A stretch of 64,000 nucleotides of DNA from Macrostomum lignano (GCA_002269645.1 NIVC01000623.1:62001-126000); one strand, 5' to 3'; counted from the stretch's first letter, positions 8,392 through 42,950 are shown. Program-made: numbers and translations. The notes: generated from the sequence alone by a model not told the origin.

Positions 8392-9584
8392 GCGGCTTGT
8401 GTGAAGTCTGGACTGGCTAATCGTTAAACCTGATGCGCCATTCTACCCATTCTATAGCCCCAGCTAGCACAAGTTTCCACATCACTCCGCACCTTGCCAA
8501 ATCCACCCACCAAATTTATAGCCTCACCTCCCACCTTTCCCGGCATCTGACTATGGGCTGATGAGGAGGTACTGAATCATGCATCTGGAATTTTCTAATG
8601 TATAAATCTGCTGTTTCCGTTGCGTATGTATACAGTAAAGCAATTTCTCTTAAAAGGTAATATAATTGAAACTATAAAGTGAGAATCTCATTCAAAAAAG
8701 GAGCTGATGAAGTGGATAGCATCCGACTAATCTGGCAATTTAATGTTCACTTCTTGTTGGCTCAGAGGAGCATCGCGTGAGAGGCTGGGGGGGGGGGGCA
8801 GAGACGGATAGACGGGATGAGACAGTGAGGGAGGCTGAGCAGCTGCCACATCTCTTCTCCATAAAATAGGATGATGAAAAGTAAAGAGAAGAAGCGACAG
8901 TGGAAAGATTTCTGGAAGAGGAAGCGGAGGCAAAGAGATGATGAGAAGAAGCTGCATGCAGTGCTCTCCTCACCGAGGAGGGGCGGCGGCGGAAAGTGGG
9001 ACGGGTGCGGCTTATCCAGAATCAGCGCACGGATTGTGTGTCACGGGCGCGTATAAAATCCGCTCGGATTATCCGACCACGGAAGTCTCAGCCGGTTCTG
9101 GGGGGGGGAGGGAAGCAGAAATTAATTGGAACGGTAAGGAAGGAAGGAAGGAAAGAAAGAAGCGCGCCTTCTGGACATTTTGTCGGCAGTGGGTGGCTGG
9201 CTACGAATGCAAGAATTTCCACTATAGGATGAAAACTGCTTGCCAAAACACACGGCAAGGCGCTTCTAAAGGAAATGAAGGCGGGAAATCCTTGTTTGAT
9301 ACGCGGACTAGAGATATTTCTGCACGGCTGAAATTGGCACTGACGATGTGACGATGACAGGCCCGAAACTGAACTCGAGACCAGACCGAAGTATCAGGAT
9401 GAGGAGGAGGTTGGCTACCTTTCTTCAAGATTGAAATTATGCTTCGGCCGTTCCTGGTCTACAAATAGCTTACCTTGTTTTGATGCAGGGCAGATTTTTT
9501 AAATTAATATATTGTATCATATTTTTATACATGTATCAGCGATTGATCAGAAACCTCGATTAGAAAAAGAATAGCAACCAAGTA

Positions 9585-14340: not shown

Positions 14341-15989
14341 CTTATTGATTTTAGTTGTTGTAGTTTGTAGTTGTGTACTGAGACCAAGGTTTGCCGTAAG
14401 GAAAGTCCTGTAGTCTGAGTCCCTCTACCTGCTGCGGCGCCAAGATAATTGCTAACAACATCGATACTCGGAATAATGTAAATGTTGGAATTTGGTCATG
14501 TACATACGTAGAATTCTTGGCTTCGCCCCCACCACCATAAAATCTATGACGACGCCCCTGCGTACATGCATCCGATAAACTTGTAGGGGGGAATCTGGCA
14601 AGCATGCAGGCTTAGTGTAAAGCATGTAAGAAGGCACTTGATCGCGGTCAAACGTCGGGCTCCCATCTATATCCATGCACGTCGAACAACTGTCCAACAT
14701 CATAAACACGTGCATCGGGTGTAGCCATTCTTTCTAGATCCATTGCACACAATTGGGCATTAGCACTCGCGACAGAGTGCATTTACATGTAACCGAAGCG
14801 CATCAGTGATCAGACATGAGTAGAGAAGGGAAGTTCTAGAAAGGAACCGGAATGATTTTTAATAATATTCGTGAGCAAGGGGAACTTCTTCCTAAAATCA
14901 CGATTTTGATCCAGGCCAATACTGCCGATCAGGGTGTGCGGAAATTGTATGAAGCGAGCGAGGTCATGCAGACTCATAATTGTCGCTAATTTTTGCCGTG
15001 ACTAGCTACTAGTGTATGTACATGTATAGGGCCCCGTGTTGGCGGGAAGTCGATTTTAATTGCTTTTTCTATCACACGGAGCTGTCGTTGGCCTGGCACG
15101 CTAGAAAATCTCTAATCAGAAGCTTCATGCAGCTACAACAGGCCTATAACAACACCCGTAGTGAAATGCGTTTGAAAATCGAAAATTCATTCACATTTTG
15201 GTAACCGACACGGCATTTCCACTGCTTCAAAGAGTATGAATTGTATGTGCGTAACATATCCTACGGGAGTACACGAGTACTTTACTATGGAGCTAGATAC
15301 TAATTTGTACTGTCGATGCACAAAGCTTTTACTTTTTGTTGAACAAAGCTAAAAAGAACGTAAAAAATTCATACAGTTTATAATGCGCTGTAGCTTTAAA
15401 TGAATATGCTCGTACATACATGTGCATCATGGATATATGTACTAATTAATAAGCATGATATTGTATTGTATTTTAAATGATCGAATTCGTATCCATGGGC
15501 ATTTTCGTTACATTCATTACATGTATATTATATACCAGGGGCGTAATAGCCAGGCCTGGCAGGGGAATTTTTTTACTGCCGTTGTATTTCGCTTTCACGC
15601 TAACATCGGAGATGGGACTGATGTATCTGTGTCGTTCCCCCCCCCCCGACGTGAATCCTGCATGACAATGCGCCTGGCCATGGTGTACTGGCGCGCGTAC
15701 GATCGAGCAATTCATGTACTGTAAATGCAGGAACGCATTCGCTATAATACACGCTCACTCAAAGTGTACACAGGGGCCCTGATTATCGAATTTTAAGGTT
15801 AATATACTGTACTGTGGGTTGGCCCTCATGAGTGTGAATCACACGAGAGGGATTTCTTATTAGATGTCAAGGCTATAGGGGTCGTCAGGGTTAGCTACGA
15901 GTACGTACAATCGTACATGTATTTTTATTCCAAAATTTGTATTCCAATTTTTGTTGGCTTCCCAACTTGCTAGTTCTAACTAACTTTGA

Positions 15990-16710
15990 GGCAAGGCTTG
16001 CATAAGGAGTGGACCGTCGCGCACATCGTGCCGATCCCGAAGAAGGTAGGGACAACGCGGAAAGAAGACCACCGCGGGATCTCGCTGATGTCCTGCGACG
16101 CTAAGCTCTTCATCCGGCTGGTGCTCGATCGTCTGCAGTCGGTGCTGGCTGGACCCGTACCTGCGGTACGAGCATAACGGATTCCGGCCGCAACGCAGTA
16201 CAGTAACACAGATCCTCGCACTCCATCATCGAGGAGGCGCGCATCCGCCATGTCTACGCTGATCATTGTCTTCGTTGACTTTCGAAAGGCGGTTGACTCG
16301 GTGTTAAGAGCCGCGCTTCCCTTTGTCCCTCGAGCCTACCGGGTCCCCCAGCAGCTAATTTACGCCGTCATGTCTCTGTATCGTGACACTCGAGCTCCTG
16401 TGGTGACGGCGGACGGCCTGTTTGACCTGTTCGATACTTCATCAGGAGTTCTGCTGAGCGACACGCTAGCGCTGTTCCTCTTCGTGCTGCTGCTGGACTG
16501 GGTGCTTCGGACCGCATTCCCCTCGCGGTCGGCTGACGACGGCTTCCTGCTACACAGAGTCATCGGTCACCGTCATGGCGAAAAGCGCCTGAGCGTGCTT
16601 GGCTACGCCGACAAACTCGCTCTCCTGTCTTCGTCCGTTGAAGGCGCCCAGAGCCAGATCGACAGGCTGGTCGAGGTGGCATCGAGCGTCGGTCTGGTTG
16701 TCCTACAAGT
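15990..16710 (+). pseudogene. Degenerate non-LTR retrotransposon RT relic (RTE-like)
   Basis: WTVAHIVPIPKK..HRGISLMSCDAKLF, VFVDFRKAVDSV, GVLLSDTLALFLF and catalytic YADD decayed to YADK; the frame is broken near 16177-16250. Confidence 0.88.
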
Positions 16711-17468
16711 ACTACATGTATAAGTAGCACAAACAATTGCGAAGCTCAGACCAAGACGCACTTCAAACTTATCCGGAATTAAAAATGATGAAAAAAAAGA
16801 AATAGCTAAGAAAACGAAAAATTAATATGAATAGATAAATTAATCAACAAAAACGGTGTTGCCTTTAAACGCACTTATCCGCAATTGTAAGACACAACGG
16901 GCTTCAGCAATGAACACTTGTTCAGGAGAATTACGCAGTTAATGCAGTATTGTTGATTATAAGAAGAAGATTTAGGTGTTTAAAAATAGATAGAATATGC
17001 TTTTAGCTTGCACTGTTTAATTAAAAATAGATAGCATAAAGCACAATTTATTGTTTTGTTATAAATATTTGTCTTTCAAAAGTCTTTAATTCTTGCACTG
17101 TCGAACCTGACTCGCCAAAAATGTTCTGACTACTTTCGAACTTGTAATAAGTTACTCCTATCTCTTACTTATAGTATTAGTTCGTTTTTACTGTTTCCAT
17201 AGTGCTCAGACATCAACTGAGCATGGAAGCCGTTTTATGGACTGACCAGACCTAGAATTTTGTGTTGCATTAAAAAGACAACTAAAATCTTTACTATTCC
17301 TTTTATACCAAATCGAGGAATAACCTGAAATTGAAAAAGCTTTTCCTTCGCCCATCGTCTGTGTCTGGAAACTCTGCGTCTAAACCGATTCACATGTGTA
17401 CTTAATTAGCGTAATAAATAAACTTTGGATTAAATTAGGCCTAGGCCTAGTAAATCGAATTTGCAGAA

Positions 17469-20400
17469 ATGGATGATATCAGAAACATGCAGCGCCGGAC
17501 ACATCGTAAGTAACTTTTCCAAACAAAGTAAATTTTGTGAAAGTATTAAAAAAGTTTTTTCTACAGTTTTCTATTTATCTTTTGGCTTTTGGCTTATTTG
17601 AGTTATTTGCACATTTGCAGTAACTGCCTGCTCACAAACAACACATCTATTTGTTTGGTAAAAAATGGCTACTTGCCCCATGGAACAGTCATACAAATAG
17701 AATGTTTGTTAGTCTGCCTAACCTAAATATGTGATTAAAATATATTCTAATAAGGTCTAGAATAAAATAGGCCTAAAGGCTAGAAAACTAAGAGTTTTTG
17801 TTAAATTGAAAAATGAGTTAAGTTTTAATCACTACCCTATTATAACTAGTGTTCTATTATAATTATTGCTATAGTTGAACTTATTGGAAAGTTGGCAAAC
17901 TTTGATTATAGATTTTAAAAGATTTGGAATATCTTCCTCAAATGCAAGACTCATAAAATATTATAAAGCCGAAGCCTGTATTTATTTTTTTTAATTATAT
18001 TTTGCAGGGCATTCTATTAATATTATAAAAGGTAATATAGATAGGAAAAGTTTAGTTAAAAAAATAGTTAAGCATAATATAGCAAATATTTATATAATAT
18101 TGTTTATGCAAATTTTATTTAGTCCACACTCAGGAAGGTGTCACATGTGTGCTGGAATATATTTCAGCGTATTTTTGGAGTGTGCGCTGTGCGCGAAGCT
18201 AAAATATGAATTTTTGCGCCGAGTTCTACATTCGTTTATTGACAAATATATAGCTAAAGTACTAATGCGCCATAGCACTAAAACTTGGTAAAAGTCCAAT
18301 TAAAACAAAACTAAAAAACAGATAAATTTTCGTACATTATGTAGGCTTTTTTTCAACTTAAAACTTTTGCTTTATTTTAGCTTATGTAGAGAATTTTCAA
18401 AAGAAATAGCTCTAACTTTACCTTATAATCCAATTTTGAATTTTATTATTCATTTTACTTACCAAGAAACAATTTTTTTATTGATATGCTTAGAAAAAAT
18501 GTAATCTTAAAGCATATTTTACACACTGCATATGCAGATTATACATTTAGATGACTCAATGTGAGCTAAATTTTTCTGATTAGGTTTTGCTATGCGCCAC
18601 TGTGCGCTAAAAACTTCTGCTAAGCCTTTGTTGTGCGCCGTTTGCGCCACTTCGCGCATATTTTTCGTTGATGTGCGCCGGAATTTTTTGCCATAATGTA
18701 CACCTTCCTGAGTGTGGTATTTAGTGACAATTTTATTAATTTATAATTTGATTATAGGAAAATTTAGAATACAAAACTTTGACTATCTTAAATATAATGA
18801 ATTCAACTATAGAAAATGCATATTAAAATTCAATATGGCTATGCCTATAAAGTATAGAGGTATAATGGTAAAATACTAGTTGTAATATAAGGTTTGACAA
18901 AAATGAAGAGCTAGATAATAGTTCTTTGGTTTATAATATCAGATCTAAGTGATAAAAAAGAAAACCTAAAAGATTGTATATTTGGTCTATGCTTATTTAT
19001 AGTTTTATATAGCATATTACTAGAAAATTCTGGAAGCTTTGATTATTAAAAAAAACTTTTATTTGGTTAGATACTACTTATACAAACTGTTACCATACAA
19101 ATTTATATTAGCTTTTATTAATATAACTTTTATATTAAAGGCTTTAGAACTATAGTTGAACATTTAATTACATTGACAAAATTTCTAGAATAAAATTTCA
19201 ATATTGCATCAAAAAAAGAATTTTCTATTAAGTTTCTAAAAATATCTAGTGTACATAAATTTCTAAATATGCATTGCACTACAATAACACTGCAATGCTG
19301 CCCATACTTTCAATAATTTTGTTATAATATTATTTACTACCTATATTATCTATAATATTACTTACTACCAAAAAATACTTCCATTTTACTAATGTAACAA
19401 TAGCAATATATCTTCTTAGATAATAAATAATTTAAATCTTTTTAAATTCTGCTTTATCTTGGTTATGAATATTACTTAATTCCCTGGTTATCTAGGGGGT
19501 AAAAAGTCAGACACAGCTATCTTGAAGACCAGTTAAGTGACAAAAAATTGCCCAAAAAACGGGTTGTGTTTTCAAAAACAATGCACCACTAGAAGTTTTT
19601 ATATAAATTTTCAAAATGATTTTGCGAGATATTTTTATTTTATTGCATGTTTTTACTTTTACAATGATTTCTGTGCTGAAACTATAGTATCTGTGGTCTG
19701 GTAGTTGAGGGTTACTTGTATAATGTATGGCATACGTATAATTTTTGATCAAACATATCAATACATAAATTAGTAAACTTCATTAAATGAAAAATGGTGA
19801 ATAATATTAGACTGGGAAGGATGCAGCAACAGAGATGAGACACGTTGTATACTGCAAGGACCCGGAGGGACTCATTGATAGCCTTCTGTACCACCACTGC
19901 ATTGAAGAAGGAAACTTTGAAGTTAAAATTGGCATAGATGGAGGAGGCAACTTCTTGAAGGTCTGTCTCACTATTGTGCAAATTGGAGCAGAGCAACAAC
20001 CTAAAACAAAGACAAGCTATTCTGTTGCCGCATGCAGTTCTCGTTTCTGTGATAGTGGAGTGAAAAAAACTGCTGATCCTTGCAATTGTCGAAGATGTTC
20101 GAGAGTCCTACTTCAACATCAAGGCTGTCCTGGACCTTCTGAGACTGCAACAGGTACGTTTCGGTCTTGCTGTTGACATGAAGATGGCTAACGCACTACT
20201 TGGCCTCCAGTGTGCCAGCAGCAGTCACCCCTGTCCATGGTGCGAGTTGAACTGCAAAGAATTCTGTAGCATGCATCATGAAGTTCCCTTGCGGTCATTT
20301 GGCAGCATACGACAGAATGCTAATAGCTACCAAGAGCTGGTGCAGCAGACAAGTAGCACAAGGCACTCGGCTGCCAGGTTCAAGAATTGTGTTAGAATGC

Positions 20401-23400
20401 CGCTGCTTGATTTTCCAGACGAGACTTTGGTGATCAACGTTGTGCCTCCAATGGAGTTGCACTTGATGCTAGGTATTGTCAATCGGCTGTTCAAGGAGCT
20501 TGATTCTCAATTACAGTCAATCTCCAACTGTACAATACGAGCACAGGACTTTGCTAATCGTTTAAACATCTGGCAGGCACCATATCGAGGTGGGCAGTTT
20601 ACTGGCAACCACTGCAGCAAGCTGCTAAACAGTGTCGACTCACTTGAGCAAATGCTGCAAGACTGCGGTGCCATAGCAGCCATGCCTATTGTACAAGCCC
20701 TTCGTACCTTTCGTGAAGTCTGTAGGACTTGTTTTGGACTGGTGCTTTTAGACGGCTACGATGCAGCAATAAAGGCATTTGCTGCGGCCTACAAGGATGT
20801 TGGCATTCCTGTCAGCCCTAAAGTCCATGCTGTCTTTGAGCATGTTGCTCCATTTCTTCGCAACCAGCCGCAAATGCCTGGATCAGCTCTGCATGGCCTT
20901 GGATTCTGGTCGGAGCAGGCAAGTGAGGCTGTGCATGCGGACTTCAGTCGCCTCTGGGACAGCAGCTACAAAGTGGCGAAAACGAGTGCACAGTACAGCA
21001 AGCAGCTGCTGAAATGCACAATTGTGTACAACTCACGGCACCAGTAAACAAGTTACTTTTAGTTGATAACTATTTTTAAAGGTAAAGGTGATTTTCTATC
21101 AAAATGAAAGTCTAATATTATTCACCATTTTTCATTTAATGAAGTTTACTAATTTATGTATTGATATGTTTGATCAAAAATTATACGTATGCCATACATT
21201 ATACAAGTAACCCTCAACTACCAGACCACAGATACTATAGTTTCAGCACAGAAATCATTGTAAAAGTAAAAACATGCAATAAAATAAAAATATCTCGCAA
21301 AATCATTTTGAAAATTTATATAAAAACTTCTAGTGGTGCATTGTTTTTGAAAACACAACCCGTTTTTTGGGCAATTTTTTGTCACTTAACTGGTCTTCAA
21401 GATAGCTGTGCAGAGCATATCTTTGGGCCATAGCCTTCCCTTCAAGTCATACCCACAGCTTGGTCTGAGTTGCTAGCATCATTCAAAGGCCAGTCAGGAT
21501 ATCTTGCTTTATCTTTATATGCCATATATTTATAATATCTATTAAATAAAATAAATTAGGTCTTTGTTTAAGCCAAGCAAACATTTATACATTCAGATAG
21601 CTAGATTTCTTACTTTTTTAAAAAAACTTAGAAAATTCACAATTACACTGTATATAAACCAGCACCTGTTGAAGGTGCCAACGGCATCCGGGTGATGAAT
21701 AAATGCTTGTGAGACTAGCTGAGGGTGTCCAGAAGTTGAGGCTTGCTTATTGTCATGCTTGATTGGAAAAACTTGAGAAATTCATATCAGGGTGTTCATA
21801 GTCACCTGGGGCCACCTGTCAAAGGTCCAGAAGCTCCGCATGGGTGAAGGCTAGTGACAAACAAAGTTACAGCTAATGCAGACACATGTGATCGACATGC
21901 TGATGAAATTTGGAGACTTGGCAAGGCTGCAGTGAGGCGCAGTGCTGATTAACGCACAGGGGTGCACTGAATACACTGGCGCTTATGGGAAAAATCCAAC
22001 CTTCTGCTCCATTCTGGCGCAGCAAAAAATTGTCAAAGGGGGGGGGGAAATTCCCCCCTCTTGGTAGTTCTGCTGTTAATACATAATGAAAAATAATTAT
22101 ATCTAAACTTGAAATCGATAAAGACATAAAAGATTGTCAATGAAAACCACATGGTTTGTTTTAGACTATGTTAATAACCTATGTCTAATTTATGTGCTGT
22201 TTTATTTTCAGGTAGAAGGGCAGATTTCTCATCAGCTGGCATATCCCCTGGAGATGGTATGTATTGTACATTGAGCTTATTTGTGTTTGTGTTGGCAACA
22301 GTAGTTGTTAAGTTCTTGTCCTATTCCAGATCCAAAAGAGTTGCTACGCAAAGTTTCTGAAACGTTTCTCAGCCGCAGTGCTCAGCCAGCCAGCACTGTG
22401 CGCAAAGTTCACGTGTGCAATGCCCTGGTGCGAATGACCAAACGAATCAAAGCCAATGTTAGCTCTGACGATCTCTTTTGCAGGTGAGCATAGACCTGAT
22501 ACTTCTATACTCGAATATAGTTATATCTACTCAAACTTTTTGTTTCTTCAGTTTATTGCCGGCCTTTTTTCAAGACTGCCGCGAGGTCCGAGCCGCTGGG
22601 CTGCGCTGCATTCGAAAATTTCTCACCGATCAATCCGCTGTCAACAGTTTCTATAAGTTTCATTTCGATCTATGTGTTGCCAAGTAAGCTTTAATTTAGT
22701 GCTTCATATTTTCTGTATCTCCGAAACTATTGGTATTTCAAGTTGGTTTTTTGGGTCCACAAAATTTTTGACTGCCAACCAGTAGATTTTCGGCATTATG
22801 ACTGCCGATTGACTAACCCAATACCTGACCCTACATAGCACTTACTTGTCTAATTCTGTAGCGCTAACTTATAATTCCGTTGTGCTAAGTTTGAATTAAA
22901 TAACACTAAGTTAGAATTCTATAGTGATAAATTAGGATTCCGTGGCGCTAAATAAGGATTCTGTGGAGCTAAATTAGGATTATGTAGCTCTAAATTAGAA
23001 TTCTGTAGTGTTAAATTAGGATTCTGTATCGATAAATTAGGATTCCGTGGAGCTAAATTAGGATTCTGTAGCTCTAAATTAGAATTCTGTAGTGTTAAAT
23101 TAGGATTTTGTATCGCTAAATTAGGATTCTGTAGCTCTAAATTAGAATTCTGTAGTGTTAAATTAGGATTCTGTATCGATAAATTAGGATTCCGTGGAGC
23201 TAAATTAGGATTTTGTATCACTAAATTAGCATTCTGTAGTGCTGAATTAGAATTCTGTAGTGCTGAATTAGAATTCTGTAGTGCTGAATTAGGATTCTGT
23301 GTCGCTATATTAGGATTCTGTACTGATGAATTAGGATTCTGTAGTGCTGAATTAGAATTATGTAGTGCTGAATTAGAATTCTGTAGTGCTGAATTAGAAT

Positions 23401-26400
23401 TCTGTAGTGCTGAATTAGAATTCTGTATCGCTGAATTAGGATTTTGTAGCTTAAAAGTTGGCTTTGATTCTTGATGTGAAATTGATTAAAGCAATAGGAA
23501 TGAACCAATGGTTAATTCACCTTCGCAGATGCCTGGATCTCGGTTGCCTAGACGAAGAGGCTAGCTTGGCGCCCTTATTTCAAAGCGAACGCTTCCAAGC
23601 TGTCAAAATGATTCGCCAATTGACTACCTCTGGCGGCGGCCGAGTCCCAGCTAGTCTTGTTCAGCCTCTGCTCTCCATCTGTCGCCACGCTGACAGAGAG
23701 GAGCGTCGCGATCAACTGATGAAGGTTGGTATCGATAATATAACATAAGGTTTATGAGTCGCTGCTTGCCAGGGAAATTTGACTTAATTTGTTGTACTGA
23801 CTGGGACTGATCCACTAATCATACATGCGCAACAGTCGGCCGAGTCGGCCGACCGGTTTGGCGGCCAACCAAGGAAGTCGCAAAAATGCCCACCCGAAAA
23901 AAAACCCAAGTAGTCGTACTAAGTAGCTGACGAGGCATTTTGGCTTAATAAGACAGTCATAGTTACTCCTGTCGTTTAGTTGCGTTAATTTTGCTTTAGG
24001 TTTTTTACATGTAAGTCGCATTTCTGGCCAAAAACTACGTCGCATTTTTGTTAAAACTAAGTCGCACGGCCGACCGAATTTTGAAGGTTGTGCATGTATG
24101 CCACTAATCCATTGCGCAAATCCACTGTTACTAGGATAGGATTTTATATTGCATGTTAAAAAAATTTCCAGACCGCTCTCTATCTGCTGGCTGAGCTTGG
24201 CGCGCTGAACCCGTCCCAGCTTGCCGGCAGCGGAGCTCTCAAAACTGTACTGCAAGCTGTACTGGACACAAGCCTGCCGCCCAGGTGTACAGAGGCTCTT
24301 GTAGGCGTATTGGCGCACCTGTTGAATAGGCCGGATACTCGGCGCTACCTGCGACCATTGCCCGAATCGCTGCATTGCCTGCTTAGCCCGCTTACCAATC
24401 CCACCAGCTGCCGGGGTGGCGACGGCCGCCAGGCCGTGCTGTGCTTGTTCCGCACCTGGCCAGGCCTATTGTCGCTGTCGCCTCGCAGCCTGGTTGCTAT
24501 GCTATTTGTTAATAGCGAAGAAGCTCGCTCGGCGCTGGTCGACTTCTTTTTCGATTTATTCCTGGTGCCGAAACCGGCCGCCGGTGTGACGGAATTCAAT
24601 GAGGCGATCAGGTGAGTAATTTAAGTAAATAGTTTGTATGACGTCATCGGACTTCTACATCTGTAAAACTTAAGTTCACCCCTTTATCACCCATAAACTT
24701 TTCAATTCCCAAGCTGTAAAAAACTCAACCTTCGCATTCTCCAAGCTTCACAATCCCAAATTCACCATCCCTAAGCTTTACAATCCCAAGCTTCACAATT
24801 CCAAATTCACCATCCCTAAGCTTCACGATCCCCAAACTTCACAATCTCCAAGCTTCACAATTCCCAAACTTCACATTCTTCAAGCTTCACAATCCCCAAG
24901 CTTCACAATCCTCAAGCTTCACAATACCCAAGCTTCACAATCCCCAAGCTTCACAATTCTCAAGCTTCACAATTCTCAAGCTTCACAATTCCTAAGCTTC
25001 ACAATTCCTAAGCTTCACAATCTCCAAGCTTCACAATCTCCAAGCTTCACAACCCCCAAGCTTCACAATCTCCAAGCTACACAGTACCGACCTTTTTGGC
25101 TTGCTACCTAGTCACAGCAGGGTAAACTCGAACTCATCTTAATTCGCCCCACGCCCTGGGATGTTTGAGAGTGACGCTTTAGTATGTTTATTTGGCATTT
25201 GCCAGTCTTTGATATTGTTTTATCTTGTAACATTAATACTTTCATAGTTGTAAATACATATTTATTCGTATTTCAGGTGCCTAGATCCTAGCGACGATGC
25301 CTGGGACCTAACCGATGGATTTGTTGCAGCGGAAGGCAGCGATCTATTAGACTACCGGTGCCCCACTCGATTGAATCTATTAGATAATCACCTGGCTTTT
25401 CTGTTGCACCTGTTTGTACAATGCGGTCTGGCTCACGGCCTGTCCAGTTTACTGGCTGACAAATCTTCTGACCAGTTGGGCATTCGCTGCGCTTTGCTGC
25501 TTGGCGAGCTCACCCATCGGAGTCGGCTGCTGCCGGGCGCTCTGCGCTCAATCAGTGCCGCCCTTAGCGCCCCAGCTCTGCTAAGAAATCAACGCGCATT
25601 GCATTGGCTGGCAGCTGTGCAGCGCGCTCGGGAGAAACCGCCGCCGCCTAAAAATGTGCTTCTAGCAGCGCTTGTCTCTCAGGTATTGTATTTCTGCTAA
25701 ATTACTGGTAGAGTTGACAATATTGCCATGGTCCTGAGCCGCTCTGAGCCTTGGTGTGCTGCTTTATATCCTTGGTGTGCTGCTTTGGATCCTTGGTGTG
25801 CTGTTTTGGATCCTTGGTGTGCTGTTTTTTATCCTTGGTGTGCTGTTTTGGATCCTTGGTGTGCTGCTTTATATCCTTGGTGTGCTGCTTTGGATCCTTG
25901 ATGTGCTGCTTTGGATCCTTGGTGTGCTGTTTTGGATCCTTGATGTGCTGCTTTGGATCCTTTGGATCCTATGTGGAATTTTCTGGATCCTTGGCAGTTG
26001 ATTTAAAGGTCTAGTGAGTGGCACTTGGTAAACCACAAAGAAGCGTTGCTTATTCATTAAAGCATCTCGCCGTCCCATTTCAGACCAAGCCTGTCAACAC
26101 TTCCCTGCTGGCTTCCGCGTCGGCAGCTGCCTTAGCCTCCGCCTGCGCGTCTTTGGCTGCCTGTCCAGACGACCCGGACGACTGGGCATGGCCGGAGATG
26201 CTCGGCCTGGTCCGCTGCTGCCTACAAGTTGACGTCTCTACAGACGGCGGCTCAGGCGCTGGTTCTACCGTTTCCCTCGCCGCTCCTGTCGCCGCCGCCA
26301 GTCCGACTGCTCTGTCCGATTGGTTGGCGGCTGCCCGCCGTTTGTGCGCCTTCTACAGCCCGCCAACAACCGGAGCTACCGCTGCCTCATTCGTGACAAT

Positions 26401-29400
26401 GCCGCTCAGTTGGCGCCACGCTGCTGACGCTTATCTAACAGGCATTGAGCTCATTCAGCTGATGGCCAGATTGCCAGATTCCAGTGAGCTGCACAAATGT
26501 GTCATCAGCCTGGTTGCCAATCTGTCAGCTTACGTGCACAATCGGCTAATGTCTGCACCTAGCCTATTGGTTAACACGTGCGCCAGATACGCGCCAGGAC
26601 TGATTGGCGCGCTAACAGCCTCGGAGCGCGGCGAGGAAGCTTTAGAGGCGTGTAACGCCAAGCAGCTGCTGCTAGATCTCGTGTCCGACCAGGCGCATTC
26701 CTATTTTCCCAAACTGGTTAGTACAATTCTTGTTTGATCACACGTTGCAATGCTGATATTTGGGACAGAGTGTCAGGGGCAGTGTCATGGCGCTAAAATG
26801 AGTGTCAGGGGACGCTAAACCGGGTATCAGGTGTAAGTGGAGCTAAGAGCTGTACTGTGGCGCTAAAATGAGTTGTCAGGGACGCCAAAATGATTGTCAG
26901 GAAGAGCTAAAATGGTTATCAGGGGTGGAGCTAAGATGTACTCTGTGTCACCAAAATGAGTTTTCAGGGGCGCAAGAATGAGTGTCGGGGGGGGGGCGCT
27001 AAAGTGGGTATCGGGGGAGTGGAGCAAAGATCTGTACTGCAGCGCTAACATGTATGTCAGGGGGGGCGCTAAAGTGGGTATCGGGGAGTGGAGCAAAGAT
27101 CTGTACTGCAGCGCTAACATGTATGTCAGGGGGGCGCTAAACTGGGTATCGGGGGAGTGGAGCAAAGATCTGTACTGCAGCGCTAACATGTATGTCAGGG
27201 GGGGCGCTAAACTGGGTATCGGGGGAGTGGAGCAAAGATCTGTACTGCAGCGCTAACATGTATGTCAGGGGGGGCGCTAAACTGGGTATCGGGGGAGTGG
27301 AGCAAAGATCTGTACTGCAGCGCTAACATGTATGTCAGGGGGGCGCTAAACTGGGTATCGGGGGAGTGGAGCAAAGATCTGTACTGCAGCGCTAACATGT
27401 ATGTCAGGGGGGGCGCTAAACTGGGTATCGGGGAGTGGAGCAAAGATCTGTACTGCAGCGCTAACATGTATGTCAGGGGGGCGCTAAACTGGGTATCGGG
27501 GGAGTGGAGCAAAGATCTGTACTGCAGCGCTAACATGTATGTCAGGGGGGGCGCTAAACTGGGTATCGGGGGAGTGGAGCAAAGATCTGTACTGCAGCGC
27601 TAACATGTATGTCAGGGGGGGCGCTAAACTGGGTATCGGGGGAGTGGAGCAAAGATCTGTACTGCAGCGCTAACATGTATGTCAGGGGGGCGCTAAACTG
27701 GGTATCGGGGGAGTGGAGCTAAGATCTGTGCTGCGGCGCCAAAATGAGTGTCATACTGTAATCATGAGTGTCCCACTGCGCAGGTTCTGGCTAGCATAGA
27801 CTACACTAGAAATGGCGGATTCGGCCGTCTACTGCTATCTAAAGCGTTAAGCAGCGGCGACGAAGACTGCCGACTGTATGCCACCCGGTTCACGACTGTC
27901 CTGCTGCGCGCCGATATGCCGTTCTTTGCCAACTGGGGCATCGAGCTGCTTGTCAAACAGCTGTACGACACTGATCCGACCGTGTGCCAGACAGCCCTAG
28001 CCGTGCTAGAAGAGGCCTGCGAATTAGAAGTAAATAAAAATATACTAGTCCGCCTTAGACCAGCCGCTGTGCACCTTGGCGATCAAGGCGCTGTATTTAT
28101 TGCTAAACTGTGCGGCTTCAGCTTAGGCTTCCGAGTACTGCAAGAGTCCAATTGGTTTCAGCAGCATTTTGATCTTTGGTGCGACCGATTGTGCAACAGC
28201 TATCCTATGCTAGTCGAACAGACGCTGACCGAAGCGCTCACTGGCTATGAGATACCGCCGCCAGGGCAGGACTTTGTGAGGGCCTCGTCTCGGCCAAAAT
28301 CTGCGCCAAGGTAGTAGCGTAAATTAATTGCTTGCTGAAAGTTAAGCAGAACTAGTAGCGGTTAGTTCCCAGCTACACTCGTAAATAAGCTTGCGTAACT
28401 CATTCACCCTAGGGAGTTTCCACACCCAAGAACACAAATTATTTTCACGCATCCGCAGGCGCGTCCTGTTGCCAACGCATCTATTCGGTCAGCTGGCTTT
28501 ACATAAAGAGGGCTTCGATTTTTTGCGCAATCAATCGTGCGTGCGAAAATCGATCGATCTAGTCTACCAGCTGCTGCAGCCTGGCCAGAGATTCGATACT
28601 GAAGCTGAAATTATCGCTGCCAAGGCCGCAGTGTGGTCCCTTGGCCATATTGGCAGCACATCCTGGGGCCTGCCACTATTAGAACAGGAGCGAGTAGCGC
28701 CCGCACTGGCTATGCTAGCTGAACAATGTCCCGTGCTATCTGTACGCGGCGCCTGTTTCTGGTCTCTTTGCTTAGTAGCGGCTACAGAGCGTGGCTGCGA
28801 TCTGCTTGCCGACCTGGGCTGGGAGGCACTCCGCAGCAATCGCAGTCAGCTCTATCCTGTTGTACTGCCTAGGCCAGATCAGCTGTTACTGCCAGCTTCT
28901 GTTAGTCCGCCAACGACAGAATCTGTTGCGGATAGCTGGCGCCTATCGCAGGATTCAGTTATAGCCAATGGCAGTCGGACTAGCTCTGTCGGCACAGCGG
29001 ACGGTATATTAGTAAGTTTGTTTTATTGGATATTTTGAGGAGCAAGGTTTCATTCCGTGCACCTAGCTAATCACTTGGCAACCATTGTTATCTTGTCTTG
29101 ATCGCAACCCAGGGCCGGCCGCACTCTCTATCAGCTGCATCTGGCGGGCAATATCATTTGCACGTGTCTTCGGTCAAACAGCAGCACCAGACTCGAATTC
29201 ATCAAAGCAGCGATTTGGTTCGAAAAACTCGCAGCATCAGCGCTAGCGAATGCGACGGCGTCTCTATTAAAATTGTTAGCAGCGGAGAACACTCGGACGG
29301 ACTATCTGCCGATGCCCCCAGTGCCGTTGTGGTAGCAGCCGCTGCGGCCGCTGTTACTGCCGGATCTACCGCTGCTAACCAGCAGTTGGCTCTGCCCAGC

Positions 29401-30652
29401 TCAGTTTCCACCTGGACTGGCGGTACCGTTCGGGCTCTCCAACAGCAACGAGTAGCTCTGAGCCTAGCGGCCAACTCGCCGTCATTGAGCGCTCTTGACT
29501 CTGCCGCCGTCGGCAGTTCGACATTGTCTCTGACTGGCGGCCTGCGCGGCTGCGGCGGTCACAAGTCAGCTGCCGCTCTCACTAAACGATGCGGCGCCAC
29601 AGCTGGCGTGCTTTACCAATGCCTAGCCCTGCCTATCGATCCGATTCGCGTCACTCTTTGCGACTGCGGCTGCGACAACGAGTTGCCAGCAGCAGCAACA
29701 TCAGAAGCATCTGATCAAAGTTTGTCAACGCCGACTAATAATAATACGAATGGCGACGCTGCCGGTGTTGCATCAGCCTCGGCAGCTTCCGACGGCACCA
29801 GCGGCTACGCCAGCCGTTCGGACTCGAAGCCTCATCTCAACGACACCTACGGCTGCAATGGCCGGAGCGGCAGTGTCGCAGTGGACTCTACAAATGGCAG
29901 CAGCGGCTCCGGCTTGGAATTGCACACCGAAGAGTCCTGCATTGCCTGCAGTTTGTTAGCTTACCGCGGACTTCCAGTACCGCCAGCTATGGAATTATTA
30001 GCTGACTCGGCCGCCTCGGTTGCATGGATTCGCAGGGAAACAGTCCGGCTAGTTGGCCAGCTGGCCTGCCATGTCAATCAGTCGCGAAACGAGTCCGCCC
30101 TCATCCAATTGAAAGCTCGTCGGCCAGCCGCGTTCAGTCAGGACCTGTGTCTGTACTCTGAGGTGGCCCTAGTCCTGGCTAAGCATCCCTATTCTAGACG
30201 ATCGCGCGCCTTTGTCCAGGACCTATTTGCTGACTCGGCATTCGACATTGTGAGTCTCTTGATTGGGTAGTGTTTGTTTGCAGTCAGCTTTATATATTAA
30301 TTATTATTAATGAAAGCTAACTGGAACAAAAATTCCCATTTCAGCTGTACTCGATCCCAACGGCTAATTGACAGTGTTAAGGAAACCCTTTTTATATCAG
30401 ACATTTCAGAGTACAAATAACTGCTATTTTGGCTTTTATCGCTCATATAGATTTGGCCTTTATGACCCGTGAAAAAAGAAATTTTTAGTGTCTGCGCACT
30501 AACAAGCTTTACTAACTGTATTTTTATGTGTAAAGCTATAATTATTGAATAGTTTGTCAAATTTCTATAGAGCATAATATAATATTGATTATGTTATTTA
30601 CTAGGATGCTGTAAACGTGATTGTGCAATGTATAATTTATGATAATGACTGA
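17469..30652 (+). CDS. RICTOR: Rictor (mTORC2 scaffold), 12 exons, about 1435 aa: join 17469-17505, 22212-22256, 22330-22483, 22552-22683, 23529-23724, 24172-24611, 25277-25682, 26084-26716, 27784-28310, 28459-29011, 29113-30249, 30605-30652
   Basis: Rictor motifs: EVRAAGLRCIR, ERFQAVKMIRQL, HLLNRPDTRRY, WDLTDGFVAAE, SIDYTRNGGFGRLLLSK..CRLYAT..WGIELLVKQL..EEACE, LPTHLFGQL, HTEESCIAC and DLCLYSEV (C-terminal Zn site). All introns are GT-AG with consistent phases; total 4308 nt. Exons 1, 2 and 12 are inferred from splice signals and phase only. Confidence 0.92.
18124..18717. mobile_element. Non-autonomous DNA transposon (MITE), 594 bp, 18-bp TIR, 8-bp TSD
   Basis: TIR CCACACTCAGGAAGGTGT (18124-18141) and ACACCTTCCTGAGTGTGG (18700-18717); TATTTAGT on both flanks (18116-18123, 18718-18725). 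Confidence 0.9.
19512..21410 (+). mobile_element. DNA transposon, Chapaev/CMC-like (RAG1/Transib-related DDE), 1899 bp, 302-bp TIRs, 4-bp TSD
   Basis: 19512-19813 is the reverse complement of 21109-21410 with no mismatch seen; termini CACAG..CTGTG; CAGA on both flanks (19508-19511, 21411-21414). Confidence 0.9.
19835..21047 (+). CDS. Transposase catalytic core (about 403 aa once one extra A in the A7 run at 20063-20069 is removed); frameshifted as assembled and lacking an N-terminal region
   Basis: KIGIDGGGNFLKVCL (D1), DSGVKK-LLILAIVEDVRESY, LAVDMKMANALLGLQ (D2), HPCPWC, PPMELHLMLG, GGQFTGNHCSKLL, PKVHAVFEH, LGFWSEQASEAVH (E). Confidence 0.8.
22925..23448. repeat. 21-bp minisatellite (CTAAATTAGGATTCTGTAGNN), Rictor intron 4
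   Basis: Direct periodicity. Confidence 0.92.
24735..25082. repeat. 15-16-bp minisatellite (CCCAAGCTTCACAAT), Rictor intron 6
   Basis: Direct periodicity; same unit as 55545-55950. Confidence 0.92.
25750..25972. repeat. 21-bp minisatellite (CCTTGGTGTGCTGYTTTGGAT), Rictor intron 7
   Basis: Direct periodicity. Confidence 0.92.
26770..27750. repeat. 69-70-bp minisatellite, about 11 intact copies plus degenerate edges, Rictor intron 8
   Basis: AGATCT marker at 27028, 27097, 27166, 27236 and onward. Confidence 0.95.
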
Positions 30653-32180: not shown

Positions 32181-32711
32181 ATGACCGAGGCCAAAGACAA
32201 GACAAATGTGATGCGGGACATCCGCATTGCTAAGCTTTGCCTAAACATCTGCGTTGGCGAGTCTGGAGACAGACTGACCAGGGCCGCCAAAGTGCTGGAG
32301 CAGCTCACCAACCAGCAGCCGGTGTACAGCAAAGCACGGCTCACCGTCCGCTCGTTCGCCATCAGGCGCAACGAACGAATCGCTGTCCACTGCACCGTTC
32401 GCGGAGACAAAGCGAAGGACATCCTGGAGCGAGGCCTGAAAGTAAAGGAATATGAACTGCCCAGGTCCTGCTTCGCTGCGAATGGAAACTTTGGCTTCGG
32501 AATCAATGAGCACATTGACCTCGGCATCAAGTACGATCCCAGTATCGGCATCTTTGGCATGGATTACTACGTTGTGCTGCAGCGCACCGGTAACCGGGTG
32601 CAGTACCGGCGTCGCAAGCGAAACCGCGTCGGCCCCAAGCAGCACATCGCTCGCGAGGAGGCCATCAAGTGGTTCCAAACCACCTATGACGGCGTCATCA
32701 TGAACCGCTGA
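32181..32711 (+). CDS. RPL11: 60S ribosomal protein L11 (uL5), copy 1, intronless CDS, 176 aa
   Basis: [53 protein letters not shown]. Confidence 0.97.
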
Positions 32712-33796: not shown

Positions 33797-34327
33797 ATGA
33801 CCGAGGCCAAAGACAAGACAAATGTGATGCGGGACATCCGCATTGCTAAGCTTTGCCTAAACATCTGCGTTGGCGAGTCTGGAGACAGACTGACCAGGGC
33901 CGCCAAAGTGCTGGAGCAGCTCACCAACCAGCAGCCGGTGTACAGCAAAGCACGGCTCACCGTCCGCTCGTTCGCCATCAGGCGCAACGAACGAATCGCT
34001 GTCCATTGCACCGTTCGAGGAGACAAAGCGAAGGACATCCTGGAGCGAGGCCTGAAAGTAAAGGAATATGAACTGCCCAGGTCCTGCTTCGCTGCGAATG
34101 GAAACTTTGGCTTCGGAATCAATGAGCACATTGACCTCGGCATCAAGTACGATCCCAGTATCGGAATCTTTGGCATGGATTACTACGTTGTGCTGCAGCG
34201 CACCGGTAACCGGGTGCAGTACCGGCGTCGCAAGCAAAACCGCGTCGGCCCCAAGCAGCACATCGCTCGCGAGGAGGCCATCAAGTGGTTCCAAACCACC
34301 TATGACGGCGTCATCATGAACCGCTGA
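33797..34327 (+). CDS. RPL11: 60S ribosomal protein L11 (uL5), copy 2, intronless CDS, 176 aa
   Basis: Four nt differences from copy 1 by eye (three synonymous, one R to Q). Confidence 0.97.
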
Positions 34328-41044: not shown

Positions 41045-41090
41045 GACAGACTGGCAGGCAGACAGACAGACATAGGGCAGGCAGGCAGAC

Positions 41091-41139
<49 letters not shown>

Positions 41140-41168
41140 TAGACAGACAGATAGACAGATAGACAGAC

Positions 41169-41213
<45 letters not shown>
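41045..41213. repeat. (GACA)n microsatellite
   Basis: Direct. Confidence 0.95.
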
Positions 41214-41316
41214 CACTGGGAAAATTATAGAGAAAATCGCACCTGGGCTTCCGTATCCTGTCCCAAGTTGCGCACTGATCCACCTCCGCCTTGCAGACCT
41301 GCTCCCCGCAGCAATA

Positions 41317-41757
41317 ATGGTGTCAAAAATCATGAAAGCCGGTCGCGTCGTGGTGGTGCTGTCCGGCAGGTACGCCGGTCGGAAGGCCTTCATCGTGAAG
41401 AACTACGACAAGTCCGGCTCTGACGAGAGCAGCGGCAAGTCCGGCCAGGACAAGCGCAACTACTCGCACTCGCTGGTTGTGGGAGTGGACCGCTATCCGC
41501 GCAAAATCACCAGGAGCATGGGCAAGAAGAGGGCCGCCAAGAAGACCAAGCTGAAGCCGTTCATCAAGATTATGAACCACAACCACGTGCTGCCAACTCG
41601 CTACGTTGTGGACACCACCTTCGACAGTAAAGTTGTGAACAAGGAGGCGTTCAAGGACGCCGCGGCCAAGCGCAAGGCAATGGCACTTGTCAAGAGCCTG
41701 GAGGAGAAGTACAAGGCGGGCAAGAACAAGTGGTTCTTCACCAAGTTGCGCTTCTAA
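41317..41757 (+). CDS. RPL27: 60S ribosomal protein L27 (eL27), copy 1, intronless CDS, 146 aa
   Basis: [51 protein letters not shown]. Confidence 0.97.
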
Positions 41758-42077
41758 CTTTATGGCTATTGTTATTGTTAGGATTTACAACTCTGTAATA
41801 TACGACTCACAGTGAGATTGATGAACTGTTCTCGCCTGTTTTAGCGAGTGTCCGAGAAATGTTTATGGTTTTATTCATTTTTTCTCCACTTTTCTAGTAA
41901 AACAACTTTTATGCGGGATAGGTTGGAAATCTACTTAAAATATTTCAAATAAATTGTAAATTGCAATCCCGTAATTATTTCCTGTTCTCCTGTTCATGCC
42001 AGTCAGCTTACTGCCGCCCTACAGATTAATCAAATTTGACTAAAAGCAGATAAGGAGAATTACAAAGACTGAAACAA

Positions 42078-42554: not shown

Positions 42555-42700
42555 GTGACCGGATTCTATGTTGGCTAGCCTTCTGTATTTCATAGAATAA
42601 CACATAGCTGCAGATTGACTTTTGCTAATTGTTTTTCATTTAGTAATTCTAGTTTTAGTAACTAAAATATAACAATTTGGCTACTTTCTTACACAACCCC

Positions 42701-42779
42701 CGTATAAAAGTGGGGCGGTCACAATGGAGGGTCACAAAACGGTCACATAGTCAAAATGTGACCGTCCCACTTGTATACG
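42701..42779. mobile_element. 79-bp mini inverted-repeat element (23-bp arms, 2 mismatches) with internal GGTCAC motifs
   Basis: CGTATAAAAGTGGGGCGGTCACA and TGTGACCGTCCCACTTGTATACG; related inverted sequence near 39115-39290. Confidence 0.5.
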
Positions 42780-42950
42780 TACAATTGACAGATATTAAAA
42801 TAACTAGATTGGCGTGTGAGTTCAGTAGCAAGGAAATATATATAAACTGTTTTATGAAAAGAAATGGTCAGTTAAAGATAATTTTAATAGGTTTAGAAGT
42901 CCGGTAGAGAAACGCACGGTTTGTGGGTTTAAGCTGGTAGTTGAGTTAAG

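What the first reader, a model, noticed from the sequence alone, without database searches (positions are those of the whole stretch)
19512..21410. Very young RAG1/Transib-related (Chapaev-like) transposon reduced to a catalytic core between two identical 302-bp ends
Seen: apparently perfect 302-bp TIRs with CAC termini, a CAGA target duplication, and one ORF region carrying all three acidic residues (GIDGG, AVDMK, WSEQ) plus CxxC and HxxxxH motifs. Established: DDE transposases with these C/H motifs and CAC termini belong to the CACTA-Mirage-Chapaev and Transib/RAG1 group; Transib makes 5-bp TSDs, whereas 4-bp TSDs fit Chapaev. Inference: the left TIR ends only 21 nt before the first ATG and no N-terminal DNA-binding or Zn region is present. 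The element may therefore be a rebuilt derivative whose native left end was replaced by an inverted copy of its right end, or a natural minimal family. Identical TIRs imply recent mobility, so an active partner should exist in the genome.
Basis: partly seen in the sequence, partly recalled or inferred. Interest (0 to 1): 0.8.

Follow-up and report, generated by a model that had tools for sequence, protein, structure and literature searches.

The report
Truncated Chapaev transposon copy in a flatworm
This is a real, very recent insertion of a cut-down, non-autonomous copy of a Chapaev DNA transposon (a distant relative of the RAG1 antibody-gene recombinase) in the flatworm Macrostomum lignano, and it is an ordinary new member of a known transposon group.

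Summary
Window 19512-21410 is a 1,899-bp element with two 302-bp inverted ends that match 302/302. Its termini are CAC...GTG and it is flanked by a 4-bp CAGA duplication. It carries one ORF, split by a +1 frameshift in an A7 run.

The repaired 403-aa protein is a RAG1/Transib-type DDE core. A family profile hits only RAG1L, RAG1 and HzTransib in the PDB. The AlphaFold model (pLDDT 90.5) matches only RAG1 and RAGL chains (E down to 4e-11).

Full-length relatives are about 650-710 aa. Their N-termini match the published Chapa zinc domain of Hydra and Aedes Chapaevs (up to 64 bits; best shuffle 8).

This copy lacks the first ~295 residues. The break falls inside a folded element, and homology runs right up to the inner edge of the left repeat. 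It is therefore a non-autonomous derivative, not a minimal family.

Relatives carry native inverted ends of 130 to over 330 bp. A simple internal deletion reaching into the left repeat therefore explains the anatomy, and a "rebuilt" left end is not needed, though not excluded.

Copy number, the autonomous partner and the empty site could not be tested.

The outer repeat ends look RSS23-like. Interest is low to moderate.

The parts
19508..19511 (.). Left copy of the 4-bp target-site duplication, CAGA
   Evidence: Read directly from the sequence. It is identical to 21411-21414.
19512..19813 (+). Left terminal inverted repeat, 302 bp, 28% GC, beginning CACAGCT
   Evidence: It is 100% complementary to 21109-21410. 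Relatives also carry long repeats.
19512..19548 (+). Outer repeat end with an RSS23/Transib-like layout: heptamer-like CACAGCT (19512-19518), a 21-nt spacer, and an A-rich 9-mer ACAAAAAAT (19540-19548). It is mirrored at 21374-21410.
   Evidence: A run of five or more A covers repeat positions 33-35 in 5 of 7 independent family elements. Background coverage is 8.7% per position. The Transib and RSS consensus sequences are from PMC1131882. Suggestive only.
19835..21047 (+). 5'-truncated Chapaev transposase gene covering only the RAG1-like catalytic core, 403 codons after repair. It lacks about 295 N-terminal codons.
   Evidence: tblastn with full-length relatives starts at 19814-19835, which corresponds to their residues ~293-314. 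The family profile hits RAG1L, RAG1 and HzTransib. The AlphaFold model has pLDDT 90.5, and its top 44 Foldseek hits are all RAG1 or RAGL.
20063..20069 (+). A7 homopolymer carrying the +1 frameshift. Relatives imply A6, reading GVKKLL.
   Evidence: The frame switches between 20064 and 20068 in every tblastn alignment (translations). It may be a real mutation or a homopolymer error in the assembly.
19937..19939 (+). Codon of D35, the first catalytic Asp (GIDGG)
   Evidence: Nearly invariant in alignment A1. It lies at the end of strand beta-1 of the RNase-H-like fold in the model.
20175..20243 (+). D114 (20175-20177), followed 19 residues later by the C133-x-x-C136 zinc ligands (20232-20243)
   Evidence: Invariant in A1. 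In the profile alignment they align with RAG1 YDEK and CTLC.
20457..20462 (+). The L208-H209 'LH' motif
   Evidence: Invariant in A1. PMC4079192 lists it as a Chapaev hallmark.
20826..20915 (+). H331-x4-H336 (20826-20843) and the catalytic E360 (20913-20915, WSEQ)
   Evidence: Invariant in A1. They align with RAG1 HKTLAH and the ...SEGNE glutamate.
21109..21410 (-). Right terminal inverted repeat, 302 bp. Its inner edge is 61 bp after the stop codon.
21411..21414 (.). Right copy of the 4-bp target-site duplication, CAGA

Best explanation
The feature is a non-autonomous internal-deletion derivative of a Chapaev DNA transposon. Chapaev belongs to the CMC / Transib-superfamily clade of RAG1-like DDE transposases. 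The host is Macrostomum lignano, and the element lies at contig NIVC01000623.1:81512-83410.

Shown:
- Two perfect 302-bp inverted ends with CAC...GTG termini and a 4-bp target duplication.
- A single ORF that encodes only the RNase-H-like, ZnC2/ZnH2 and C-terminal part of the transposase.
- Absence of the ~295 N-terminal residues, which in full-length relatives hold the Chapa zinc domain and the region that extends the structural match to the RAG1 core.

Inferred:
- The parent was a roughly 3-kb element with native inverted ends of at least 302 bp.
- A deletion, probably from abortive gap repair after excision, removed everything from inside the left repeat to about codon 295. This is why the repeat ends exactly where the truncated reading frame begins.
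- The derivative kept both ends and was then cut out and pasted into this CAGA site by a full-length transposase supplied in trans.
- By homology with RAG1 and Transib, that reaction would involve nicking at the CAC ends, a hairpin on the flanking DNA, and staggered 4-bp integration.
- The insertion is recent. The copy's own product cannot mobilise it, because it lacks the end-binding N-terminal half and is also frameshifted as assembled.
For: Anatomy.

RAG1-type core:
- The family profile hits only RAG1L (E 1.4e-4), RAG1 and HzTransib in the PDB. The catalytic D, CxxC, HxxxxH and E columns align.
- The AlphaFold model has pLDDT 90.5. Its top 44 Foldseek hits are all RAG1 or BbRAGL (E 4e-11 to 1e-6, TM 0.54-0.67). 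The next hit is Hermes at E 0.07.

Chapaev membership of the family:
- An N-terminal profile built from 18 full-length relatives scores 64.4, 45.5, 43.2 and 30.9 bits on the published Chapa domains of Chapaev-2_HM, -1_AA, -1_HM and -5_HM. The best of 260 shuffles scores 8.2 bits.
- The hallmarks are met: CAC/GTG termini, 3-4 bp duplications, and the C(2)C, LH and H(4)H motifs (for the definition; for the data).

Truncation:
- Relatives are 650-710 aa.
- Homology begins at their residue ~293-314, at 19814-19835.
- The breakpoint falls inside the beta-hairpin at residues 286-308 of the full-length M. lignano model.
- The full-length model aligns to RAG1 over about 100 more columns and with higher target TM.

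Long native repeats in relatives: 216 bp at 99% in the same genome; 140, 133 and 158 bp; over 330 bp.

The 4-bp duplication recurs in relatives: CACC, GACT and TGCT.

Internal-deletion derivatives of Chapaevs are already documented (PMC4079192).
Against: - No full-length parent, no second copy and no empty site were seen, so the deletion origin and trans-mobilisation are inferences.
- No protein more than 60% identical to this ORF exists in the 5.8-billion-cluster collection, although M. lignano proteins are in it.
- The deletion model requires the parent's repeats to be 302 to about 363 bp long, which is unverified.
- A perfect 302/302 match is cleaner than the 1-2% arm differences seen in some relatives. 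That fits a recent copying of one end equally well.
- One relative has a 3-bp duplication and two have none readable.
Confidence: 0.62

Rival explanations
1. End regeneration. A 5'-truncated, one-ended Chapaev fragment regained a left end when about 302 bp of its right end were copied in inverted orientation, for example by template switching during repair. This created a new two-ended element that could be mobilised.
For: The repeat ends exactly at the truncation point. The arms are 302/302 identical, whereas other family members show 1-12% arm divergence. The length of 302 bp has no independent support as the native repeat length.
Against: Long native repeats are the rule in this family, so no special event is needed. 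One relative also has a perfect 111-bp repeat (L017). The right repeat's inner edge lies 61 bp after the stop codon. That resembles intact relatives, which show about 68 bp in L016 and about 135 bp in L053. The target duplication shows only that the finished structure transposed. It says nothing about how the structure arose.
Confidence: 0.2
2. A natural minimal autonomous family, in which the 403-aa core-only protein is the complete transposase.
For: The ORF keeps every catalytic and zinc-ligand residue and has no stop codon other than the one introduced by the frameshift.
Against: - Of 10,668 clusters related to the family, the best 150 are mostly 600-750 aa and carry the N-terminal region.
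- Homology to that longer protein runs to the repeat edge, and the break falls in a folded element.
- The part that extends the match to the RAG1 core is missing, as is the zinc domain.
- The ORF is frameshifted as assembled.
Confidence: 0.02
3. The truncated core protein is expressed and acts as a regulator, for example as a dominant-negative partner of the full-length transposase like the KP protein of P elements. In that case the copy would be more than inert.
For: The first ATG follows the repeat by 21 nt. The ORF is intact apart from a homopolymer indel that may be an assembly error.
Against: There are no expression data, and no evidence of selection on this copy. Its youth alone explains the intact frame.
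Confidence: 0.05
4. An assembly artefact: the perfect inverted repeat was created by mis-assembly rather than by biology.
For: Perfect identity over 302 bp, and a homopolymer frameshift in the same element.
Against: The structure has family-typical CAC...GTG termini and a clean 4-bp duplication. It also has a 1.3-kb unique coding interior homologous to a large transposase family. Foldback read artefacts give whole-insert palindromes, not terminal repeats flanking unique DNA (own knowledge).
Confidence: 0.03

Closest known systems
Chapaev transposons, RING-less subgroup (Repbase Chapaev-1_HM, -2_HM and -5_HM of Hydra; Chapaev-1_AA of Aedes)
   Same: The termini are CAC...GTG and the target duplication is 4 bp. 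The DDE triad and the C(2)C, LH and H(4)H motifs are present. Full-length relatives of the window protein carry an N-terminal Chapa zinc domain that matches these published sequences at 31-64 bits.
   Different: This copy has lost the Chapa domain and everything up to about 34 residues before the first catalytic Asp. Its core could not be compared with Repbase core sequences, which are not available here. The nearest protein anywhere is only 60% identical.
Chapaev internal-deletion derivatives and MITEs (GarfieldN1_BM, ConanN1/N2_AC; PMC4079192)
   Same: Both are non-autonomous elements made by internal deletion of a full-length Chapaev, keeping both ends.
   Different: Those are short, non-coding, multi-copy families. 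This element still holds two-thirds of the ORF, and its copy number is unknown.
Chapaev3
   Same: It belongs to the same wider group. The N-terminal profile gives weak matches of 26 and 15 bits.
   Different: Chapaev3 elements make TWA duplications between A and T (PMC4079192). Here the duplication is CAGA.
Transib / HzTransib
   Same: They share the RAG1-like fold and motif order. HzTransib appears among the profile and fold hits. The outer repeat end has a similar heptamer, ~22-nt spacer and A-rich 9-mer layout.
   Different: Transib makes 5-bp duplications, has ends of about 38 bp, and has no extra N-terminal domain (PMC1131882, PMC4411706). This element has a 4-bp duplication and 302-bp ends, and its family has a Chapa domain.
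RAG1 / ProtoRAG RAG1L
   Same: These are the best structural and profile matches. The catalytic D, CxxC, HxxxxH and E residues align.
   Different: Sequence identity is about 13-17%. There is no RAG2-like gene in the element. It is a transposon copy, not a domesticated recombinase.
EnSpm/CACTA and Mirage (the rest of CMC)
   Same: They share CA...TG termini, short duplications, and the C(2)C and H(3-4)H motifs (PMC12730594).
   Different: Their duplications are 3 bp and 2 bp, their domain architectures differ, and they lack a Chapa domain (own knowledge, in part).

Membership tests
Chapaev (CMC / Transib superfamily) | [quoted passage not shown] | tested here: met
   D35, D114, C133/C136, L208-H209, H331/H336 and E360 are invariant or nearly invariant in 36 sequences. 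The definition is from PMC4079192.
Chapaev (CMC / Transib superfamily) | Terminal inverted repeats with 5'-CAC...GTG-3' termini | tested here: met
   The termini are CACAGCT...AGCTGTG. Relatives L015, L016, L053 and L069 also start with CAC. L001 starts with CAG.
Chapaev (CMC / Transib superfamily) | 3- to 4-bp target-site duplication | tested here: met
   The window element has CAGA. Relatives have CACC, GACT and TGCT (4 bp) and GGT (3 bp).
Chapaev (CMC / Transib superfamily) | N-terminal Chapa zinc domain in the family's full-length transposase | tested here: met
   A profile of 18 relatives was scored against the sequences in Additional file 5 of PMC4411706. It gave 64.4, 45.5, 43.2 and 30.9 bits for the RING-less Chapaevs. 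The best of 260 shuffles gave 8.2 bits. The published sequences were transcribed from a machine-read PDF and may contain errors.
Chapaev (CMC / Transib superfamily) | Chapa domain present in this particular copy | tested here: not met
   The ORF starts at the equivalent of residue ~293-314. No N-terminal homology exists within +/-1.5 kb. The copy is a truncated member.
Chapaev (CMC / Transib superfamily) | Core transposase groups with Repbase Chapaev cores in a phylogeny | not testable with these tools
   Neither Repbase nor the RepeatMasker protein library is available here.
Chapaev3 | TWA target duplication, inserted between A and T | tested here: not met
   The duplication is CAGA. The definition is from PMC4079192.
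Transib (canonical) | 5-bp target-site duplication | tested here: not met
   Only 4 bp match; TCAGA against CAGAG fails.
Transib (canonical) | Transposase consists of the core alone, with no other identifiable domain | tested here: not met
   Full-length relatives have a Chapa-type zinc domain. The definition is from PMC4411706.
RAG1-like fold (Transib superfamily in the wide sense) | RNase-H-like domain plus ZnC2/ZnH2 and C-terminal domain, superposable on RAG1 | tested here: met
   Foldseek's top 44 hits are all RAG1 or RAGL, with E 4e-11 to 1e-6 and TM 0.54-0.67. The full-length relative reaches E 1e-13.
RAG / ProtoRAG transposon | An adjacent RAG2-like gene inside the element | tested here: not met
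   The 1,295-bp interior holds only the one transposase-related ORF.
Autonomous DNA transposon | Encodes a complete transposase | tested here: not met
   About 295 N-terminal residues are missing, and the ORF is frameshifted.
Active (currently mobile) family | Other near-identical copies, an autonomous partner, or a polymorphic empty site | not tested
   No tool here searches the eukaryotic genome by DNA. The homeologous contig could be read only to within about 2.5 kb of the site.

The most novel reading that the evidence does not exclude
The outer ~38 bp of the inverted ends in this Chapaev group are built like a 23-type recombination signal and like Transib ends. They have a CAC heptamer, a spacer of about 22 nt and an A-rich 9-mer; here this reads CACAGCT, 21 nt, ACAAAAAAT. 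If this is a real, conserved transposase-binding layout, the bipartite signal architecture predates the Chapaev/Transib/RAG split. Its reader would lie in the N-terminal half that this copy has lost. No paper in the searchable library links Chapaev with heptamer and nonamer, but the Repbase Reports that describe Chapaev could not be read.
Probability: 0.35. Interest if true: 0.5.

Novelty: new member of a known kind. Interest (0 to 1): 0.25.

Why it matters
For annotation, this fixes the identity of a feature with no Pfam or PDB sequence hit. It is a Chapaev-group element in Macrostomum lignano, a regeneration and transgenesis model. The same genome also holds a divergent full-length Chapaev with an intact 702-aa ORF (P0005, L001).

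A perfect-repeat copy with an intact target duplication suggests that Chapaev transposase was active recently in this lineage. That matters for genome stability and for possible tool development.

More broadly, the family is very large: 10,668 clusters at 50% identity, nearly all unannotated. It supplies many RAG1-fold proteins. It also gives a hint that the heptamer-spacer-nonamer design of recombination signals is older than Transib. That hint would bear on the origin of V(D)J recombination if it is confirmed on many curated Chapaev ends.

Tried and rejected
- Pfam and PDB sequence searches with the single 403-aa protein found nothing. Only profiles and structure revealed RAG1.
- Pfam on full-length relatives gave only DUF1280 and a weak zf-AD match. 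There was no RAG1 N-terminal family.
- I looked for the window's own ORFs in the gene-position collection to count copies. Neither the 289-aa ORF nor several neighbouring ORFs is on record.
- An exact 26-mer from the repeat end has no match in the metagenome contigs.
- Self-BLAST of the repeat, the interior and the flanks within the window found no other copy and no paralogous empty site. The repeat also has no match in 67 fetched loci.
- Empty-site test. I identified the homeologous contig NIVC01002752.1 and walked towards the site through UBE2C and RPL11. The stored flank ends at a position equivalent to window ~23,973, about 2.5 kb short. Two protein searches meant to retrieve the annotated Rictor protein, which could have bridged the gap, returned nothing usable.
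- I tried to define the ends of more relatives by comparing copies. This gave one extra family (L015/L018) and confirmed the left end of L052/L021. L033/L048 have no recognisable right end.
- A 5-bp Transib-type duplication does not fit.
- The minimal autonomous family and assembly-artefact readings were rejected for the reasons given under rival explanations.


Full report
**1. The observation**

The repeat finder reports arms at 19512-19813 and 21109-21410. They are 302 nt each, 100% complementary, and 1,295 nt apart. A direct string comparison confirms this. The arms begin CACAGCT and end AGCTGTG. The four bases outside each end are CAGA (19508-19511 and 21411-21414), and a five-base duplication does not fit. 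The repeats are AT-rich at 28% GC. The interior is 47% GC.

The interior carries one reading frame in two pieces, 19835-20176 and 20178-21047 as listed. Translation and tblastn place the frame switch inside the A7 run at 20063-20069. Removing one A yields 403 codons without a stop. Nothing else in the window resembles the repeat, the interior or the flanks.

**2. What the protein is**

The single sequence gives no Pfam or PDB sequence hit. It does have 55 relatives in the large protein collection, the nearest at 60% identity. Complete relatives are about 680-700 aa and come from animals such as Macrostomum lignano and Patella caerulea, or from eukaryote-bearing metagenomes. An exhaustive profile search finds 10,668 clusters at E below 1e-3 and 1,593 at E below 1e-30. 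Most of the best 150 are 600-750 aa.

A profile of 36 members (A1) hits only eight PDB sequences of interest: amphioxus RAG1L (E 1.4e-4), six RAG1 sequences and HzTransib. The alignment places the family's vDlK on RAG1 YDEK, CtwC on CTLC, HavlvH on HKTLAH and wsEq on the RAG1 glutamate. From my own knowledge of the RAG1 structure, these are D708, C727/C730, H937/H942 and E962. The spacing from D to the first Cys is 19 residues in both proteins.

The AlphaFold model of the 403-aa protein is confident (pLDDT 90.5, pTM 0.89). Its 44 significant Foldseek matches are all RAG1 or BbRAGL chains, with E from 4e-11 to 1e-6 and query TM of 0.54-0.67. The next hit is Hermes at E 0.07. The RAG1/Transib-type assignment is therefore well founded.

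**3. Which family**

The literature defines Chapaev by four features: 3-4 bp duplications, invariant CAC...GTG termini, a DDE triad, and the C(2)C, LH and H(4)H motifs (PMC4079192). It places Chapaev and Chapaev3 with Transib and TransibSU in one superfamily. Chapaevs are distinguished by an N-terminal 'Chapa' zinc domain (PMC4411706). The wider CMCT clade shares CA...TG termini and 2-5 bp duplications (PMC12730594).

The window element meets all the DNA and motif criteria. For the zinc domain, I built a profile from the N-terminal ~300 residues of 18 full-length relatives. I scored it against the Chapa-domain sequences printed in Additional file 5 of PMC4411706. The scores were:
- Chapaev-2_HM 64.4 bits (E 1.7e-19)
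- Chapaev-1_AA 45.5 bits
- Chapaev-1_HM 43.2 bits
- Chapaev-5_HM 30.9 bits
- Two Chapaev3 sequences, 26.1 and 15.3 bits
- The RING-containing Chapaevs and RAG1 itself, not above the best of 260 shuffles (8.2 bits)

The family is therefore the RING-less Chapaev subgroup. Chapaev3 is excluded by its TWA duplication rule, and canonical Transib by its 5-bp duplication. I could not run a tree against Repbase cores.

**4. What is missing from this copy**

tblastn with six longer relatives starts at window 19814-19835, which corresponds to their residues ~293-314. No N-terminal homology exists within 1.5 kb on either side. The frame stays open back to 19814, the base after the repeat, and a TAG lies just inside the repeat. 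Coding homology therefore abuts the repeat.

In the model of the full-length M. lignano relative P0005 (pLDDT 81), the window protein begins inside the beta-hairpin at residues 286-308, not at a domain boundary. That full-length model aligns to RAG1 over about 565-644 columns, against 445-504 for the truncated one. Its E-values are better (1e-13) and its target-normalised TM is higher. So besides the zinc domain, the copy has lost roughly 100 residues that correspond to the N-terminal part of the RAG1 core. From my own knowledge, this is where the dimerisation/DNA-binding and nonamer-binding domains sit. A 'natural minimal family' is therefore not tenable, and the copy must be non-autonomous.

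**5. Are 302-bp ends special?**

They are not special in this family. The examples found were:
- The full-length M. lignano element (L001:5503-8870, intact 702-aa ORF) has 216-bp ends at 99%.
- A Patella copy has ends of at least 128 bp.
- A marine-metagenome family has an identical 686-aa ORF on at least 24 contigs and ends longer than 330 bp.
- Metagenome relatives show 140 bp (L016), 133 bp (L053), 158 bp (L069) and a perfect 111 bp or more (L017).

A deletion whose left breakpoint falls within a long left repeat automatically makes the repeat end at the breakpoint, which is what is seen. The inner edge of the right repeat lies 61 bp after the stop codon. In intact relatives the corresponding distance is about 68 bp (L016) and about 135 bp (L053).

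I therefore prefer a plain internal deletion. This is the usual origin of non-autonomous DNA transposons and is already documented for Chapaevs. Only the parent element can decide between them. Either way, the intact 4-bp duplication shows that the finished two-ended derivative was itself transposed, which requires a full-length transposase in trans.

**6. Target duplication in relatives**

Four-base duplications flank L015 (CACC), L053 (GACT) and L069 (TGCT). L016 has 3 bp (GGT). L001 and the degraded L052 show none. This supports reading CAGA as a genuine duplication.

**7. Source and context**

Window 41078-43554 is 100% identical to M. lignano GCA_002269645.1 contig NIVC01000623.1:103078-105554. 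The window is therefore 62001-126000 of that contig. A second contig, NIVC01002752.1, is a copy at about 95-98% identity. I could read it only as far as the equivalent of window ~23,973, about 2.5 kb short of the insertion site. The empty-site test therefore remains undone.

The element lies in an AT-rich spacer about 0.8-1 kb upstream of the first recognisable exons of a Rictor homologue.

No protein more than 60% identical to the element's ORF is in the 5.8-billion-cluster collection, which does contain M. lignano proteins. That says nothing firm about a partner, because transposon ORFs are often left unannotated.

**8. Age**

Zero differences in 302 paired positions, an intact duplication and a stop-free 403-codon frame all point to a recent event. 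The single frameshift lies in a homopolymer of an assembly that, from my own knowledge, rests on long noisy reads. It may therefore not be real.

**9. A side observation**

The outer repeat end reads CACAGCT, then 21 nt, then ACAAAAAAT. Across seven independent family elements with defined termini, a run of five or more A covers repeat positions 33-35 in five. Background coverage is 8.7% per position. The window element and L053 share GAC(C)AAAAAATTGCCCA at the same distance, although their proteins are only about 35% identical.

This is the layout described for Transib ends (CACAATG, spacer, AAAAAAATC) and for RSS23 (PMC1131882). The sample is small. After allowing for scanning about 100 positions, the chance probability is roughly 0.01. 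Two elements (L016, L069) do not fit. I found no paper linking Chapaev to heptamer and nonamer, but the original Repbase Reports were not readable.

**10. Verdict**

The 'minimal family' reading is rejected, and the 'rebuilt end' reading is unnecessary but still open. The element is an ordinary, young, non-autonomous member of a known transposon group in a genome where that group had not, as far as the searchable literature shows, been described. Interest is low to moderate.

Noticed in passing
window 19512-19548 and 21374-21410; L001:5503-5540; L015:134-171; L052:2828-2865; L053:2554-2591: The outer ends of the inverted repeats in this Chapaev group have an RSS23/Transib-like layout: a CAC heptamer, a spacer of about 22 nt, and an A-rich 9-mer. 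A run of five or more A covers repeat positions 33-35 in 5 of 7 independent elements, against 8.7% background. The window element and L053 share GAC(C)AAAAAATTGCCCA despite about 35% protein identity.
   Followed up: partly
relatives P0010 (residues 128-254) and P0014 (residues 243-374): Pfam DUF1280 (PF06918), a family of C. elegans proteins of unknown function, matches above its cut-off (27.4 and 25.9 bits). The match covers the stretch just before and including the first catalytic Asp of full-length Chapaev transposases. DUF1280 proteins may therefore be Chapaev-derived.
   Followed up: no
window 20063-20069: The only defect in the ORF is one extra A in an A7 run. This could be a homopolymer error of the assembly rather than a mutation.
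   Followed up: no
window ~22300-30270 (+ strand): A multi-exon Rictor homologue starts about 0.8-1 kb to the right of the element. It seems unannotated on this contig. The homeologous contig NIVC01002752.1 carries an annotated 1,429-aa RICTOR gene. The insertion is therefore in the gene's 5' flank.
   Followed up: partly
window 32181-32711 and 33797-34327; 41317-41757 and 44864-45403; 42078-42554: There are tandem duplicates of the ribosomal protein genes RPL11 (uL5) and RPL27 (eL27), with a UBE2C-like E2 gene between the RPL27 copies. The same arrangement is found on the homeologous contig.
   Followed up: partly
window 36429-39040, 58007-63119, 49140-50651, 53226-54149, 26990-27753, 22853-23450 and others: The window holds many long tandem arrays. 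Examples are a 16-bp unit repeated 164 times and a 19-bp unit repeated 269 times. The second has strong GC skew and produces long spurious ORFs.
   Followed up: no
window 15980-16723: A reverse-transcriptase fragment, the remnant of a retroelement, lies 3 kb to the left of the Chapaev copy.
   Followed up: no
L001:5503-8870 (M. lignano NIVC01000691.1): This is a second, divergent Chapaev family in the same genome (47% protein identity). It has an intact 702-aa ORF and 216-bp ends at 99%, starting CAG rather than CAC, with no readable duplication. A MITE-like repeat (L001:2-268 and 2400-2665, 98%) has a third arm at 8873-9139 that abuts its right end.
   Followed up: partly
L004-L011 (ENA/Tara marine metagenome contigs): A Chapaev family has an identical 686-aa ORF on at least 24 contigs from different ocean samples. 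Its ends are longer than 330 bp, and about 1.2 kb of tandem repeats lie between the left end and the ORF. It is probably an active family in a planktonic animal.
   Followed up: partly
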